Assembly: GCF_964204865.1 (NCBI RefSeq)
Contig: NC_135252.1
Coordinates: 6,634,001 to 6,698,000, forward strand
Length of the DNA: 64,000 nucleotides
Reading direction: 5' to 3'
Origin: Styela clava
Taxonomy: Eukaryota
Part shown: positions 57,943 through 63,678 of the stretch, one piece after another
Position numbering within the stretch: the first letter of the stretch is position 1
Layout: each line of letters opens with the position of its first letter
Made by a program: the position numbers and the translations under genes
The notes under the pieces: model-generated
Told to the model about the DNA's origin: nothing
The model's database searches: none
The model's input: only the letters and a program-made list of their open reading frames with translations

Positions 57943-60900
57943 TTAACTTTTTGTTGGAGAATAAAGAAATAAAATATCTTCATCTGTCCCATAACTTTTC
58001 CGGGCTCTTTCAAGAGTTTCAAAAGTGCATTGAACGTGTTCACCTGGGATAGAAAAGAACATAAAATCAAAGGTCAAAATTGTTATTCAAACAAAATGAC
58101 CTTGAAGCACAAAAGCAGGGGATTACCAATTATTTTACTTCTTTACAATTCAGTTAACACAAAGACACGATTTCATAAAACAAATGCAATGCAACCTATC
58201 AAAATGAAAATTTGGTCTCACCGTCAGGGCTAGGGTCATTTAGGAAAAATATTTTTCGGTTCAAGTCATAGCCTACTATGACAACAAAATGACCCCAATA
58301 ATCCGAACTCATTTGATTATTTTCTGCGTTCAATTGTTGTGATGTAATGGTAGAGTATTCGCCACCATTCCAGCAACAAAACCAAAAACAGCATGGAATT
58401 TCTTGAGGTGAGTTTGATGCCAAATTGCTGCTATCCACTGGATTACTATGCAGTTCTTTGTCATTGATGAGAACAATTATTGGCTGTAAAAACGAATAGC
58501 GGTACTGAAAATCATATGCTGCATAATTGACACACAATAAAATCGGTTGAAATCCAGGTAAAACACACTGTCTTAAATCATAATATATTAAAAGATGACT
58601 ATAATAACTTAAGCCTGTGATTCTTGTGAATGGAATATCAAATTTGATTTGGAAGTACAAAACAAATATTCCAATCCTCGCTTGCGCAACAAACATTGGG
58701 ACAATGGATAACCAGGCCTTATGTTAACACTCTGCCATTGCTACAAAATACTACATATAACTTTTTTGTATCAATATTTTGCAACAAGCCTTGAGCATAA
58801 AGAGTATAACCTCATATCTACAAAACTCCACTCTAGTATCGAATTTAAAATCATCATATTCCTAGCTTAATGTAACATTACCATTACCACGATGACCAGA
58901 TCAACCCAAAGCTTTAATATAACTGTTACAGCAAAACAGTGCCTTATTCTATTCAGTGAAAAATAGGAGTGAGAAAGTATCTCAATCTTGACACTGCCTG
59001 ACTGGAGCAATTTTTAGTACTCGATTTTATGAAATTCATTTGCGAAAACATGGATGCCTTGTTTTTCAAACGCTAATGCATTGCAAACTAGTATGTTATT
59101 TTTGCCATCCCCCTTGGTTCATGCACCTAGGAATGGGAACTGTCGTAACTAGACAAGTTGCGGGAAATGAACATAATCAATTATATTCTTATGTCATAAA
59201 CGTTGTATCAGTGTTGCCGCTGGTAGCTGCATACCGGTATACTACAGTAGCTCGCTTATTGTTAGATTGAATTGAGGCAAGTTTTATTATGAATTTTAAA
59301 TGCTGAAATGTTTTTTGCATTTTTTTACCGAAAAAACATGGTGGGTCAGCAGTTCGCCATCTCTGCTAGCCCTATATAACAAGTTGCATACATTGTCAAA
59401 ATTATTATGTTTCCTGACATTTGTGTGGTTGATGACAATTTCATGCACAATATTGAATAAAAATCACCTGTTCAGTTTCGAGATGCTTTAATATACAAGA
59501 CAAATCAACAGAACGTTTTTCAACTTTGACATTTTTATCATTAGCTGTTGAAAATGACAAGTTAACTCGTTTTTCTTCTTCAGATAAATCTGATTCCATC
59601 TCATTCATATAAAATGACTCAGTTCTATAATTGCTGTCTACACCCAACGTTTTGGTGCAAAATTGGTGAGAGATATCTACAAAATGAATGTTGAAATTAT
59701 AAGTTTTCTCTTAATTTTTACTATTGCTTGACCTTATCAAACTATGAGGAATATTTCAGAAATATGAACACTTTTATTCACAATTTTATAATATTGCTAT
59801 TAGTTATAAAGGGTTCCATTACATTTGAACCCACGTACATTTGAACCCATGACAATTGCACCTGTATGCTATTGCACCTATGGAATTTTTTTTGTTTCAC
59901 GGATAGTTAAACCCATACTAACCCTAACCCATGGGTTTTAGCACCCGCATATAGATTGAACCCGTGGATATACGCATGGGTTCAAATGTACGGTGACCGT
60001 TATAAAGTGGTAATAGGCGAGACCTAGCTTTAGCAATTGCATGAATAGATCATGTACAGAAATAAGATTACTTAGTATTACAAATAATGAATGGCGTGCA
60101 CGAAGCTAACTCCAAATTCATGTTTGCCAATGACTACCTGCCGCCAGAGCCTTGTTTGAATCAATAAAACCATTTTATAAAATATGTATTTAATAATCAA
60201 AATCTGATTAGAAAATTACCAGGCTTTTGATTTTGAGCAGCCTATACATTAATATGACATAAAAAGGTAGGGTCAGCAAGTTTACATTTTTTCGAAGTAC
60301 AGGAATGAAAAAAAAATAAATGATTATGCCCACATATTGCCGAGAGAAAAACGCGCATACAGGTACAGTGATAACTTAACAGGTGTTGGCATGATTTAGA
60401 TATGCTAATACAATCAACAGATCTACAAGATTATAATGCAGTAAAATATAAACAAAATACTAAAAATATTACCTAAAATTTGACAAAGATAAGCCAAGTC
60501 AATTGTCCAAACACTTTTGCCCAAGTTATGCTCTTTGCAGGCTTCTTCAATGGTATTTACTGGCGACAAGGGCTTCAAGTATCTGTTTTAAAGTAGAACT
60601 AAACTGTGAAACTCGAGAATTGAGAAATGCCTATTTCCTGGCTCTGAGTAATATCCTAATTGTGTTGCCAGAAACACAGACGATTTCATGTTTTCAGATT
60701 TTGGCATCGGTTTGTTTCTCAGAATAAAGTTATATATTGATTCTAAATGAGTGAATAAAATAATAATGGGCAACTGCGCTTAGTACCGTAGCAAGGCGAG
60801 AGGCTGTGTCTCACATTATAGAGACATTATACAGTTTGTTGCCCTGAAAAATTAAAAATAAATTAATCAGATTAAAAGTATGTACCGGTATGTGTATTTA

Positions 60901-61368
60901 TTCTGTTATTTGTATCATGATGATAATATGAATAAGAAGGCAATATTAATGTTGAACACAGATAAATATGTAGATCCTACCCTATAATCGCAAGGCCATA
61001 CAGGTATAGTCTACCGTACCGGTACCGTATGCCAAAACACATATAGCCTATGCCACATTCATTTCTGATATCCAGACTTCCACATCTAACTTTTTCAGGT
61101 CACACCCTTAATAGAAGTCAAAAATACTGCTTCAGTTCCATTAGGCCTTAATTTTGAATGCAACGGCGCTCGTGGAATGTACACTGAACAAACAGACAAA
61201 TGCAGAATCCAAGTTAACGGATACTTGTACCCGGCACCGTACCAACCTTGTCGTCATTCTTAAGCAAGCCAGGCCACAGTCCCACGATCCTTCTTGCGGT
61301 ATATGCGGGACGTCTTCGATAAGAGTGAAAGTTTTCCCAACATTGGCGAACATGCTAACCCCCGCCAT
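57943..61368 (-). CDS. GUCD1: GUCD1 (guanylyl cyclase domain containing 1; papain/C39-like fold); 5 coding exons, 267 aa
   Basis: Exons 61368-61247, 60582-60473, 59676-59468, 58483-58222 and 58043-57943 join in frame (804 nt). Motifs VPHIPQ..SWDCGLAC, SVWTIDLAYL, GHFVVIVGYD and ARKSYGTDEDILF. Confidence 0.93.
59812..59998. mobile_element. MULE-like MITE with 9-bp TSD and 15-bp subterminal repeats
   Basis: TIR ggttccattacatttgaaccc / gggttcaaatgtacggtgacc; perfect TSD gttataaag. Confidence 0.85.
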
Positions 61369-61566
61369 CTGCAATGAACTTAGTAAGAAATGCCCCGGCA
61401 ACCTGGCATTTTCAAATGTTATATGAGGGTTTTCCCCGTGATTTGTACGTTGCTCTTTCGTGCCAGACACTGCACAAAAAGCATTTAAATTTTATTCAAA
61501 TGAAATTTGCGCAAGGAGCGATAATATTCAATATACAGAAAACAAACACGTTTAGTAAAAAAAACA

Positions 61567-62136
61567 TTAAAATAAGCCATCCGCAATTTGTTGCGAAACA
61601 CTCATGTTCCGTAGCTTTGCAACTTGACGAGCTCCACGAGTTACGATGTTCAGGATGTTTTCTTCTACAGGATCTTTTTTGTCGGCTCTTTGCAATCTAC
61701 TAATTACAATCAAAAACTCTTCAAAATCGACCGTACCAGAATGGTCAATGTCCATAGAGTTGAAACATCGCCAGCGTTCGTTAGGTTTACTTGATTCTCC
61801 GAATTCATCTAAAACGCTGTTCATCTCGATGAAGTCGAGAATGCCATCGCGGTTAGAATCAAAGATTAGAAATTGCGCTTTAAAATTGCTTATCTCAGCA
61901 GGAGACCAATGAGGAAACTTTTTAGCATACTCTTCATCGGAAACATCTAAAAGCTTTCGCCGAGTGTTGCTGTTTTGGCGGCTTGCGAAAACCTCTTCTA
62001 AGTGAGCATAGTGAAGTTTTTCTATGACGTTTTCTTCTTTTGGGATGTTTTTCCTTTCCCCGAATGAATTATAATCTTGGGGCCTGTGGTAGCTGATGAT
62101 CTCGGGCTGCAAAGGGTAGGACATAAGATTTCCCAT
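61567..62136 (-). CDS. Intronless EF-hand Ca2+-binding protein, 189 aa (EFHD/swiprosin/AIF1-like core) with N-myristoylation motif
   Basis: Two canonical EF loops, DSNRDGILDFIE and DIDHSGTVDFEE; starts MGNLMS; AATAAA on the minus strand at 61496-61491. Confidence 0.88.
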   Translation of the reverse strand: MGNLMSYPLQPEIISYHRPQDYNSFGERKNIPKEENVIEKLHYAHLEEVFASRQNSNTRRKLLDVSDEEYAKKFPHWSPAEISNFKAQFLIFDSNRDGILDFIEMNSVLDEFGESSKPNERWRCFNSMDIDHSGTVDFEEFLIVISRLQRADKKDPVEENILNIVTRGARQVAKLRNMSVSQQIADGLF

Positions 62137-62149
62137 CCCGATCTTACGT

Positions 62150-62420
62150 CGTGCAAACCTCGTGACAATCAGTCACACGCAGCGTAAAGTGCGATGGCAG
62201 ATAACAGTTGCATCCCGGCTCCGATAGATCAGCGATTATTGCGATGCAAATAAGATTTTATGACGTAACAATGCAAATTCCCCCGACCTGGGTGACGCAA
62301 TAATGGATATTATATTACGTGAAGTCGGTTTGGACACGAATGGCGCACGCCCATCTGTCAATGATGGCGTCTGCTGATTGTGGTTGTAAATTATAATGTT
62401 GAGTTCCCTTCTCACCTTTT
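62150..62420. promoter_or_regulatory. Putative CpG-rich promoter between the divergent EF-hand/GUCD1 and REEP5-like genes
   Basis: Locally CpG-rich; CRE/ATF-like tgacgtaa and tgacgcaa, and YY1-like atggcg motifs; positional inference. Confidence 0.4.
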
Positions 62421-63518
62421 ACCTATCGGGTGTGCACCGCACTCCTTATCGTAGTTAATTTGCCATTGCTGGAGGAGGTTGGGCATTTGTCGGAAACCAA
62501 CGCTGTTCTCATTTAATAAATGAACTTTTGACTTCAGGCTGTCAGACTCAGGACTATTTCTCTCTCAGTTGGTTAGCGATAGGTACCGGTACACCGGTGT
62601 GAATATGTTAGGGAAGGTTATTTTCAGATTTTGGATGGATACTAAAGGTACGGTAGGCACCTGACAGCCTGAGGATTGCCAATGTCAAAAAAAAAATTTC
62701 AGTTCTTGCTTAACTGTTATAAATTACCAATCTTCTGATCTTGATTACCGTACCGGTACCGTACAGCCGTATGTGACACCAGATCCAAGCAAACAAGTAA
62801 ATTAGCCGTCCAGCGAACTGCGCTTGAATACCGTAGGCTACACATTTACTTTCTGAAATATGTTATAGCCTAGTCTACTGCATTCAAGCATTAATATCCA
62901 GGTATCTGAATATGATCTCATGCACTAAATTCTTAATGGCAGAATGAAGTAATTTTGAAATCAGACATCCTCAGACGAGCAGTTTACATCAATCAGTCAA
63001 TGGGAAGAAAAGAACAAGCATGCGGTTCAAAGTCTGATTTTGGGTTGGCGAAACGTTACAGAAATACATTTATGTCTGTATGTTAGTGTGCAGCAGGACT
63101 ATTAAATTGCATAGTATAGTATTTTTATTCTTGCAGCCGGACAGTATCCTCGCATTATACGAATACACTAGCGAAAAGGCATTGAGAGAAGAATTGGAAA
63201 TCAGTCCTGCGAAACCTCTTTTGATAAATGATTTTTTGATTATTTTGTTTCTTAATAATGAATCAAAGCTGCTCTAAAGATACATTTAACTTATACAATG
63301 CTTTTTTTGGTCGGCATTGGCAGATTGGTATGCTCACTAACCTGCAATGTCAACAAGCTTTAGGTGCATAATGTATCTGCATTGATATTAAAATTTATAT
63401 ATTATATTCGCAGGGCACACATCAGCTTATCCCAATCATAAGAATAGTAGACTTATTAATTCTTACAACAAATAATAGAATTATCTCGGCATCTTTAAAA
63501 TACTACTGATAGTTGAAT

Positions 63519-63678
63519 ATGGCCAGTGAAGAAAAAACAGCAACCTCCGGGTCCATTGTGTCACCAAAAACCTGGGTGCAAAAATTGGATGAACTACTTG
63601 AAAGCAAAAATTTTATCACTGAAGGATTTGACAAGGTGGAAAAGAAGGTTAACGTTAAAAAACGATATCAGGCCATTG
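63519..63678 (+). CDS. REEP5: REEP5/6 (DP1/Yop1)-like protein, first coding exon; the gene continues beyond the window
   Basis: KLDELLESKNFITEGFDKVEKKVNVKKRYQAIG resembles the REEP5 N-terminus ([32 protein letters not shown]) and ends at a phase-1 GT donor. Confidence 0.72.

What the first reader, a model, noticed from the sequence alone, without database searches (positions are those of the whole stretch)
61247..62260. EF-hand gene nested in a putative 5' intron of GUCD1: bicistronic or alternatively processed locus
Seen on the minus strand: a strong donor (gac|GTAAGA, 62147) lies 11 nt before the EF-hand ATG (62136). The whole 189-aa ORF follows, then its stop (61567) and an AATAAA (61496). 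Next come a branch-like ttactaag and an acceptor ttcattgcAG directly abutting the GUCD1 ATG (61368). Inference: one promoter could yield two unrelated proteins, EF-hand mRNA by intron retention plus intronic polyadenylation and GUCD1 mRNA by splicing out the entire EF-hand gene. An alternative is a tunicate-style operon resolved by SL trans-splicing. Either way, a Ca2+ sensor with a myristoylation motif would be co-regulated with GUCD1, which retains a papain-like Cys/His pair (WDCG...GHFV). I do not know of this pairing having been described.
Basis: partly seen in the sequence, partly recalled or inferred. Interest (0 to 1): 0.82.

Follow-up and report, generated by a model that had tools for sequence, protein, structure and literature searches.

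The report
Sea-squirt operon-like pair: EF-hand gene, GUCD1
In the sea squirt Styela clava a small intron-less calcium-binding gene sits about 80 bases in front of GUCD1 on the same strand, and this looks like one of the many ordinary two-gene "operons" of sea squirts, not a gene hidden inside a GUCD1 intron.

Summary
The window is Styela clava, an ascidian. The upstream ORF (62136-61567, minus strand) is a single-copy, single-exon EF-hand gene of an ascidian-restricted family. The downstream gene is a five-exon GUCD1 orthologue.

Spliced RNA contigs from three studies recover GUCD1 introns 1-3 each time. None shows a 62147-to-61369 junction, so the "5' intron" model is not supported.

One run has a contig running unbroken from 62259 through the EF-hand ORF and the gap into spliced GUCD1. 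Another run has separate mRNAs. There the EF-hand contig ends at 61451, 40 nt past AATAAA. The GUCD1 contig ends exactly at the G of the AG that abuts the ATG (61369), and nothing covers the 81 nt between.

This meets the working definition of a Ciona operon: same strand, under 100 bp apart, single-exon 5' gene. It differs in having a spacer and an AATAAA. The spliced leader itself was not seen, and I could not identify the S. clava SL RNA gene.

The adjacency is absent in another ascidian, where no GUCD1 lies within 5.5 kb downstream. Contig depth ratios differ widely between runs.

Verdict: probably a lineage-specific ascidian operon, a new member of a known kind and of low interest. The scan's first readers noted other candidate operons in this genome; these are unchecked.

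The parts
62224..62279 (-). Promoter-proximal and TSS region of the EF-hand gene. It holds two octamer-like ATTTGCAT motifs (62278-62271 and 62251-62244), a CRE-like TTACGTCA (62268-62261) and a TATA-like cataaaat.
   Evidence: Sequence. RNA contigs begin at 62259 (X1) and 62224 (X5), with no coverage further upstream in X1. That these motifs act as a promoter is inferred.
62142..62147 (-). Donor-like GTAAGA in the EF-hand 5' UTR. It is not seen to be used.
   Evidence: It is the only GTRAG in 62300-61369. It is retained in all contigs that cross it (X1, X5, X10), and no joint starts here.
61567..62136 (-). Single-exon EF-hand gene of 189 aa, starting MGNLMS, with two EF-hands at residues 86-145. 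NCBI labels it 'calmodulin-like protein 10'.
   Evidence: It is 99% identical to the S. clava protein P0001 and single copy in G000. Contigs cover it in 4 runs.
61451..61566 (-). EF-hand 3' UTR with AATAAA at 61496-61491. The apparent mRNA 3' end is near 61451.
   Evidence: The X5 contig 62224-61451 (774 nt) ends 40 nt after the AATAAA. A contig end is only an approximate 3' end.
61370..61450 (-). An 81-nt spacer (intercistronic region) holding the branch-like ttactaag, the pyrimidine stretch and the AG acceptor at 61370-61369.
   Evidence: It is uncovered in X5 and covered without a break in X1. Sequence.
61247..61368 (-). GUCD1 exon 1. The ATG is at 61368, and the exon holds the WDCG motif.
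   Evidence: PF09778 positions 1-38. Joint 61247 to 60582 in X1, X5 and X9.
60473..60582 (-). GUCD1 exon 2.
   Evidence: Joints in three runs. PF09778 positions 31-57.
59468..59676 (-). GUCD1 exon 3.
   Evidence: Joints in three runs. PF09778 positions 61-124, E 5e-15.
58222..58483 (-). GUCD1 exon 4. It holds the GHFV motif.
   Evidence: Joint 59468 to 58483 in three runs. PF09778 positions 127-183 and Peptidase_C39_2. The donor G|gtgaga was placed by reading frame.
57943..58043 (-). Coding part of GUCD1 exon 5, with stop TAA at 57945-57943. The protein is 267 aa.
   Evidence: Acceptor cccag|GTGAAC and reading frame. PF09778 positions 189-212 of 212. This exon lies outside the stretch laid, but the X1 contig has 421 further letters after exon 4.

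Best explanation
This is a two-gene, operon-like transcription unit of the ascidian Styela clava. Transcription starts near 62260-62224 on the minus strand. Most transcripts are cleaved and polyadenylated about 40 nt after the AATAAA, near 61451, and give the monocistronic EF-hand mRNA. Transcripts that read on carry the unpaired 3' splice site ttactaag...ttcattgcAG at 61369. There a short spliced leader is trans-spliced onto GUCD1 exon 1, so that the GUCD1 mRNA consists of the leader directly followed by its ATG.

Shown: the gene models; RNA that runs across the gap; separate mRNA contigs whose ends lie at 61451 and at exactly 61369; no cis junction.

Inferred: the leader itself; that GUCD1 depends on the upstream promoter; the exact poly(A) site.
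For: The organism is an ascidian: the EF-hand ORF is 99% identical to a Styela clava protein. In X1 a 2029-nt contig is collinear from 62259 to 61247 and then spliced through GUCD1 exons 2-4, with no coverage upstream of 62259. So RNA crosses the gap, and it is not even DNA contamination. In X5 the EF-hand contig 62224-61451 and the GUCD1 contig are separate. The GUCD1 contig ends at 61369 with all 972 letters aligned, which is the G of the AG that abuts the ATG. There is zero depth over 61370-61450. Ending within 1 nt of that AG by chance in an ~80-nt gap has odds of roughly 3 in 80. An RNA starting at 62259 carries 17 ATGs before the GUCD1 ATG, so the read-through RNA needs 5' processing to be translated. 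Literature on Ciona: operons are defined as same-strand pairs less than 100 bp apart; there are 1,310 operons holding 2,909 genes; 60% of 5'-most genes are single-exon (PMC2760879); dicistronic cDNAs plus SL on the downstream gene are the accepted evidence (PMC1488885). Here the 5' gene is single-exon and single-copy.
Against: No leader letters were seen on any contig. The Ciona SL followed by GT is not in this genome above the control count, and I could not find an S. clava SL RNA gene. Typical Ciona operons have no intercistronic DNA and mostly lack AATAAA (PMC1488885), whereas here there is an 81-nt spacer and a canonical AATAAA. A contig across two genes does not prove a single molecule (tool caveat). 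Only one of three runs bridges the gap. If the leader ended in AAG as in Ciona, a fork in the assembly graph would be expected at 61370, not 61369. In Botryllus, a relative, a similar pair (fuhc sec/tm, 227-bp gap) shows read-through RNA but no SL (PMC3691228).
Confidence: 0.6

Rival explanations
1. These are two independent genes that merely lie close together. GUCD1 has its own compact promoter in the gap, with a very short 5' UTR or a short outron. The X1 contig reflects occasional read-through past the EF-hand poly(A) site, or overlapping RNA ends joined by the assembler.
For: The sequence around the start, gcagATGGCGGgg, resembles the vertebrate YY1/TISU short-5'-UTR initiator. That resemblance comes from my own knowledge and was not tested. 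RNA-seq covers extreme 5' ends poorly, so a contig can stop near the ATG without any leader. A canonical AATAAA and an 81-nt uncovered spacer suggest efficient termination of the upstream mRNA in X5. Contig depths differ about 13-fold (X5) and 70-fold (X9) between the genes. The Botryllus fuhc pair is a precedent (PMC3691228). The adjacency is not conserved in another ascidian.
Against: The GUCD1 contig ends exactly at a good 3' splice site (branch-like tactaag, pyrimidines, AG), which is a coincidence under this model. The 81 nt would have to hold both the upstream cleavage region and a whole core promoter. In Ciona, same-strand pairs less than 100 bp apart are overwhelmingly SL-resolved operons (PMC2760879).
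Confidence: 0.27
2. GUCD1 mRNA starts at the EF-hand promoter and cis-splices 62147 to 61369, removing the whole EF-hand gene as a 5' intron. The EF-hand mRNA arises by intron retention plus intronic polyadenylation.
For: A consensus-like donor GTAAGA at 62147 and a good acceptor at 61369 are both present. Contigs can drop rare isoforms (tool caveat).
Against: No 62147-61369 joint appears in X1, X5 or X9, although all three recover the three other GUCD1 junctions. In X5 the GUCD1 contig ends at 61369 with no extra letters. A cis-spliced form at that depth would have carried up to 30 letters of 62148-62177. One GTRAG in 932 nt is what chance gives.
Confidence: 0.04
3. The mRNA is a stable, functional bicistronic one. 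The X1-type RNA is the mature GUCD1 message, and GUCD1 is translated from it by reinitiation or internal entry.
For: The X1 contig joins the full EF-hand ORF to correctly spliced GUCD1 exons.
Against: Seventeen upstream ATGs and a 189-codon ORF precede the GUCD1 ATG. X5 has a GUCD1 contig without the upstream part. This would not be the usual tunicate mode (PMC1488885).
Confidence: 0.04

Closest known systems
Ciona intestinalis SL-resolved operons (Satou et al. 2006, PMC1488885; Satou et al. 2008, PMC2760879)
   Same: Ascidian host. Same-strand pair less than 100 bp apart. Dicistronic. Single-exon protein-coding 5'-most gene. RNA spanning both cistrons. The downstream gene begins at an acceptor with no used upstream donor. 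The two genes are functionally unrelated and their RNA levels are not tightly coupled.
   Different: Most Ciona operons have no intercistronic DNA: the upstream poly(A) site abuts the acceptor AG. Sixteen of 18 lack AATAAA. Here there is an ~81-nt spacer and a canonical AATAAA 40 nt before the apparent 3' end. The SL was not observed here, and the Ciona SL gene sequence is not found in this genome.
Caenorhabditis elegans SL2-type operons (as summarised in PMC1488885 and PMC7986045)
   Same: AAUAAA-directed 3' end formation of the upstream gene, followed by a spacer of roughly 100 nt and a trans-splice acceptor for the downstream gene.
   Different: The phylum differs. Tunicates are reported to use a single SL for both monocistronic and operon genes, with no SL2 specialisation. 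Nothing here shows spacer elements that recruit a leader.
Botryllus schlosseri fuhc-sec / fuhc-tm pair (PMC3691228)
   Same: A styelid ascidian. Two same-strand genes separated by a short, featureless gap of about 200 bp. [quoted passage not shown]
   Different: In Botryllus, 5'-RACE found no SL on the downstream gene, and the authors favour read-through. Here the downstream 5' end coincides with a splice acceptor, but it was not sequenced to its end.

Membership tests
Ascidian (Ciona-type) SL-resolved operon | Same-strand neighbouring genes with an intergenic distance under 100 bp (the working definition in PMC2760879). | tested here: met
   The EF-hand contig ends at 61451 and the GUCD1 contig ends at 61369, leaving 81 nt. 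The distance from stop codon to ATG is 198 nt. The ends are contig ends, so the figure is approximate.
Ascidian (Ciona-type) SL-resolved operon | The downstream mRNA carries the spliced leader at an unpaired acceptor. | tested here: inconclusive
   The X5 GUCD1 contig stops exactly at the acceptor G (61369), but no leader letters are present. The S. clava SL is unknown. Searches for the Ciona SL and its Sm site in G000 gave only background or a decoy upstream of tRNA genes. Raw reads were not available.
Ascidian (Ciona-type) SL-resolved operon | RNA representing the unresolved polycistronic transcript. | tested here: met
   The X1 2029-nt contig is collinear from 62259 to 61247 and then spliced into GUCD1 exons 2-4. 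This is one of three runs, and a contig is not proof of a single molecule.
Ascidian (Ciona-type) SL-resolved operon | No intercistronic DNA, with the upstream poly(A) site abutting the acceptor AG, and usually no AATAAA. | tested here: not met
   There is an 81-nt uncovered spacer in X5 and an AATAAA at 61496. This is typical of Ciona operons but is not part of the working definition.
Ascidian (Ciona-type) SL-resolved operon | The 5'-most gene is often single-exon (60% in Ciona). | tested here: met
   The ORF is uninterrupted, and the contigs are collinear with the genome over 62224-61451. The orthologue in L036 is also uninterrupted.
Gene nested in a cis-spliced intron of its host gene | A host-gene splice junction that spans the nested gene (62147 to 61369). 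| tested here: not met
   No such joint appears in three RNA runs from three studies, and all of them show GUCD1 junctions 1-3. Rare isoforms cannot be excluded from contigs.
GUCD1 / Pfam PF09778 (Guanylate_cyc_2, peptidase C39-like fold) | A match along the whole family profile, with the Cys and His motifs. | tested here: met
   Exons 1-5, searched separately, hit profile positions 1-38, 31-57, 61-124, 127-183 and 189-212 of 212, in order. Exon 4 also hits Peptidase_C39_2. WDCG and GHFV are present. Catalysis was not tested.
N-myristoylated EF-hand Ca2+ sensors | Gly2 with a small or hydroxyl residue at position 6, plus functional EF-hand loops. | tested here: inconclusive
   An MG(N/Q) start occurs in all 13 family members with a full N-terminus. 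Residue 6 is S in Styela but Y or Q in most others. Two EF-hands are detected. Neither the lipid modification nor Ca2+ binding was tested.

The most novel reading that the evidence does not exclude
Styela, a stolidobranch, may resolve operons differently from Ciona. It would use a canonical AAUAAA-directed 3' end and a spacer of about 80 nt before the trans-splice site, a nematode-like geometry, and possibly a leader unlike the Ciona SL. If so, this locus would be a handle on how operon architecture diversified within ascidians.
Probability: 0.25. Interest if true: 0.4.

Novelty: new member of a known kind. Interest (0 to 1): 0.2.

Why it matters
It matters little beyond annotation. About a fifth of Ciona genes lie in such units, mostly unrelated gene pairs with a single-exon gene in front. 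One more pair in Styela is therefore expected and does not imply a functional link between a Ca2+ sensor and GUCD1. The locus is useful in three modest ways. It is a clean test case for the S. clava spliced leader. It warns gene-prediction pipelines not to fuse the two genes or to model the EF-hand gene as an intron. It also hints that some Styela operons keep a spacer and an AATAAA signal.

Tried and rejected
1. The cis-intron model was rejected, because no 62147-61369 joint appears in three runs.

2. Retrogene origin of the EF-hand gene was rejected. There is no paralogue in G000 beyond generic EF-hand hits at 30-34% identity. Single-exon orthologues exist in other ascidians.

3. The search for the S. 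clava SL RNA gene failed.
   - The Ciona SL followed by GT, with up to 1 mismatch, gave 2 hits against 3 in the control.
   - TAAGGT...AGCTTTGG gave 42 hits against 92 in the control, with no recurrent leader.
   - With up to 3 mismatches, an array of more than 45 copies of ATTCTATTTGCATAAG appeared on contig C3. It lies about 38 nt upstream of tRNA genes in a tRNA array and is followed by TT, not GT, so it is a decoy.

4. Rfam found no RNA family in 59600-62600.

So the neighbours of the Ciona, Clavelina and Logan orthologues could not be read. Synteny rests on one unnamed ascidian found in JGI metagenome contigs.

6. The literature search found no paper on Styela clava operons or trans-splicing, and none linking GUCD1 with an EF-hand neighbour.

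7. I guessed that the divergent + strand gene is REEP5-like. Pfam on its first exon did not confirm this.

8. The search of protein representatives, structure prediction and complex prediction were not used. Nothing in the claim rests on them.

9. The joined GUCD1 coding sequence was translated only inside scripts, to fix frames and exon ends. It was sent to no search; exons were searched one by one by reference.

Full report
**Observation.**
- A donor-like gac|GTAAGA at 62147.
- An ATG at 62136 opening a 189-codon ORF that stops at 61569-61567.
- An AATAAA at 61496-61491.
- A branch-like ttactaag and the acceptor ttcattgcAG ending at 61369, directly followed by an ATG at 61368.

Pfam finds an EF-hand pair at residues 86-145 of the ORF and the GUCD1 family PF09778 in the peptide that starts at 61368. 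The donor-like site is the only GTRAG between 62300 and 61369, and about 1.8 are expected by chance, so it carries no weight on its own.

**Organism and genes.** The ORF is 99% identical to a Styela clava protein that NCBI labels 'calmodulin-like protein 10'.
- The EF-hand gene is single copy in this genome. The only other hits are generic EF-hand matches at 30-34% identity.
- It has no intron.
- A profile search finds 17 clear relatives (E below 1e-49). Those with names are all ascidian (Styela, Ciona, Clavelina). After them the scores fall to generic EF-hand level.
- All 13 members with a complete N-terminus begin MG(N/Q). Residue 6 is Ser only in some of them, so N-myristoylation is plausible but not established.
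- The PDB and Atlas searches give only calmodulin, troponin C and AIF-1-like EF-hand resemblance.

GUCD1 has five exons: 61368-61247, 60582-60473, 59676-59468, 58483-58222 and 58043-57943. It encodes 267 aa. I searched the exons one by one by reference, and they hit PF09778 positions 1-38, 31-57, 61-124, 127-183 and 189-212 of 212, in order. WDCG and GHFV are present. The joined coding sequence was translated only inside scripts to fix frames and was sent to no search.

**Transcript evidence.** No run is on record as RNA. However, contigs of X1, X5 and X9, from three different studies, skip GUCD1 introns 1-3 at GT-AG borders, so they are RNA. Four results matter.

1. No run shows a 62147-to-61369 junction.
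2. In X1, one 2029-nt contig is collinear with the genome from 62259 to 61247. That stretch covers the EF-hand 5' UTR, the ORF, the 3' UTR, the whole gap and GUCD1 exon 1. The contig then splices through exons 2-4, with 421 further letters that fit exon 5. Nothing is covered upstream of 62259 in X1, so this is not even DNA contamination.
3. In X5 the two mRNAs are separate.
   - The EF-hand contig spans 62224-61451 and ends 40 nt after the AATAAA.
   - The GUCD1 contig has 972 letters, all aligned, and ends at 61369, the G of the AG that abuts the ATG.
   - The bin depths leave exactly zero coverage over 61370-61450.
   - Had GUCD1 mRNA been cis-spliced to 62147 at that depth, the contig would have carried up to 30 letters of the upstream exon. 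It carries none.
4. Contig depths of the EF-hand and GUCD1 parts are about equal in X1 (one contig), 256 against 20 in X5, and 5585 against 80 in X9. The tool warns that depth is a poor measure of expression. At face value, though, the two RNAs are not tightly coupled.

**Comparison with what is known.**
- In Ciona, operons are defined in practice as same-strand pairs less than 100 bp apart.
- There are 1,310 such units holding 2,909 genes, about a fifth of the genome.
- Single-exon genes make up 60% of the 5'-most members (PMC2760879).
- The accepted evidence is dicistronic cDNA plus SL on the downstream gene (PMC1488885).
- The Ciona leader is ATTCTATTTGAATAAG, and a single SL serves both monocistronic and operon genes (PMC1488885, PMC7986045).

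The Styela locus meets the definition: an 81-nt gap between the contig ends, a single-exon 5' gene and RNA that spans the gap. It departs from the typical Ciona operon, which has no intercistronic DNA and usually no AATAAA.

An RNA that starts at 62259 has 17 ATGs before the GUCD1 ATG. The read-through RNA therefore looks like a precursor that needs 5' processing, not a translatable GUCD1 message.

**What is not shown.** No spliced-leader letters were seen.
- The Ciona SL followed by GT is not in this genome above the control count.
- A search built on the Ciona Sm site gave fewer hits than its control.
- A relaxed search found an array of more than 45 copies of ATTCTATTTGCATAAG. It sits about 38 nt upstream of tRNA genes in a tRNA array and is followed by TT, so it is a decoy.
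- If the Styela leader ended in AAG as in Ciona, an assembly fork would be expected at 61370, not 61369. That is a one-base misfit I cannot resolve without raw reads.

The main rival is that GUCD1 has its own compact promoter in the gap and the X1 contig is read-through. The start context gcagATGGCGGgg recalls the vertebrate YY1/TISU short-5'-UTR element. That resemblance comes from my own knowledge and was not tested. In the related Botryllus, the fuhc pair shows read-through RNA across a 227-bp gap without any SL (PMC3691228).

I put the SL-resolved operon at about 0.6, the independent-promoter reading at about 0.27, and the cis-intron and functional-bicistron readings at about 0.04 each.

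**Conservation.** A scan of metagenome contigs found two JGI contigs, L036 and L037. Both carry a 191-aa, single-exon orthologue from an unnamed ascidian. It is 56% identical to Styela and 80-85% identical to the Ciona-like members. tblastn with each of the five Styela GUCD1 exon peptides finds nothing there (best E 0.19). The search covered 5.5 kb downstream and 2.1 kb upstream. In Styela the whole GUCD1 gene spans only 3.4 kb. The pairing is therefore not conserved in that species. This argues against a selected functional link between the two proteins and fits the lineage-specific turnover expected of ascidian operons.

**Verdict.** The favoured 'gene inside a 5' intron' reading is not supported. 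The alternative operon reading is the best explanation but lacks the decisive leader read. The arrangement is ordinary for an ascidian, so I rate it a new member of a known kind with interest about 0.2. The one mildly novel angle is the AATAAA-plus-spacer geometry, which differs from the Ciona norm. The scan's first readers noted other candidate operons elsewhere in this genome (s1-807961, s1-817540). I did not check them, and they did not change my scores.

Noticed in passing
window 59800-60010 (GUCD1 intron 2): A dispersed element of about 190 bp with terminal inverted repeats. The genome holds at least 1,423 candidate copies at 97-99% identity. RNA-contig depth over it is in the thousands, with many variant contigs. 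It looks like a young, high-copy MITE-like element that is widely transcribed or embedded in many transcripts.
   Followed up: partly
window 63416-63678 (+ strand): A divergent neighbouring gene. Its first coding exon has an ORF from about 63513 and ends at 63678. There, contigs of three runs continue with the same non-local sequence (CAATTTTGTCTATCC...), meaning a splice to an exon beyond the window. An adapter-flanked contig end at 63416 suggests a TSS there. The gene shares an intergenic region of about 1.1-1.2 kb with the EF-hand gene. My REEP5-like guess was not confirmed by Pfam.
   Followed up: partly
window 62213-62169 (minus strand): The EF-hand 5' UTR holds a short upstream ORF: an ATG at 62213, 14 codons, then TGA. 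It ends before the donor-like site and the main ATG.
   Followed up: no
window 61515 (minus strand, EF-hand 3' UTR): In X9 one contig leaves the reference at 61515 and continues for more than 255 unrelated letters. This may be a divergent haplotype, an alternative 3' UTR or a chimeric contig (table 7).
   Followed up: no
G000:C3:24847563-24923046 (L116 = 24905000-24914999): A large tandem array of tRNA genes, with 28 tRNA matches in 10 kb. Each unit has ATTCTATTTGCATAAG about 38 nt upstream of a tRNA gene. That sequence matches the Ciona spliced leader at 15 of 16 positions and contains an octamer motif. It is probably an upstream promoter element and not an SL gene.
   Followed up: partly
L036 2174-2749; L037 1794-2369: Two JGI 'metagenome' contigs are ascidian nuclear DNA. 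They carry the single-exon EF-hand orthologue with no GUCD1 nearby. This shows host DNA in those metagenomes.
   Followed up: partly
window 62259 (5' end of the X1 contig): The X1 2029-nt contig has 10 unaligned letters before 62259. The tool did not show them, so their nature (adapter, leader or chimera) is unknown (table 8).
   Followed up: no
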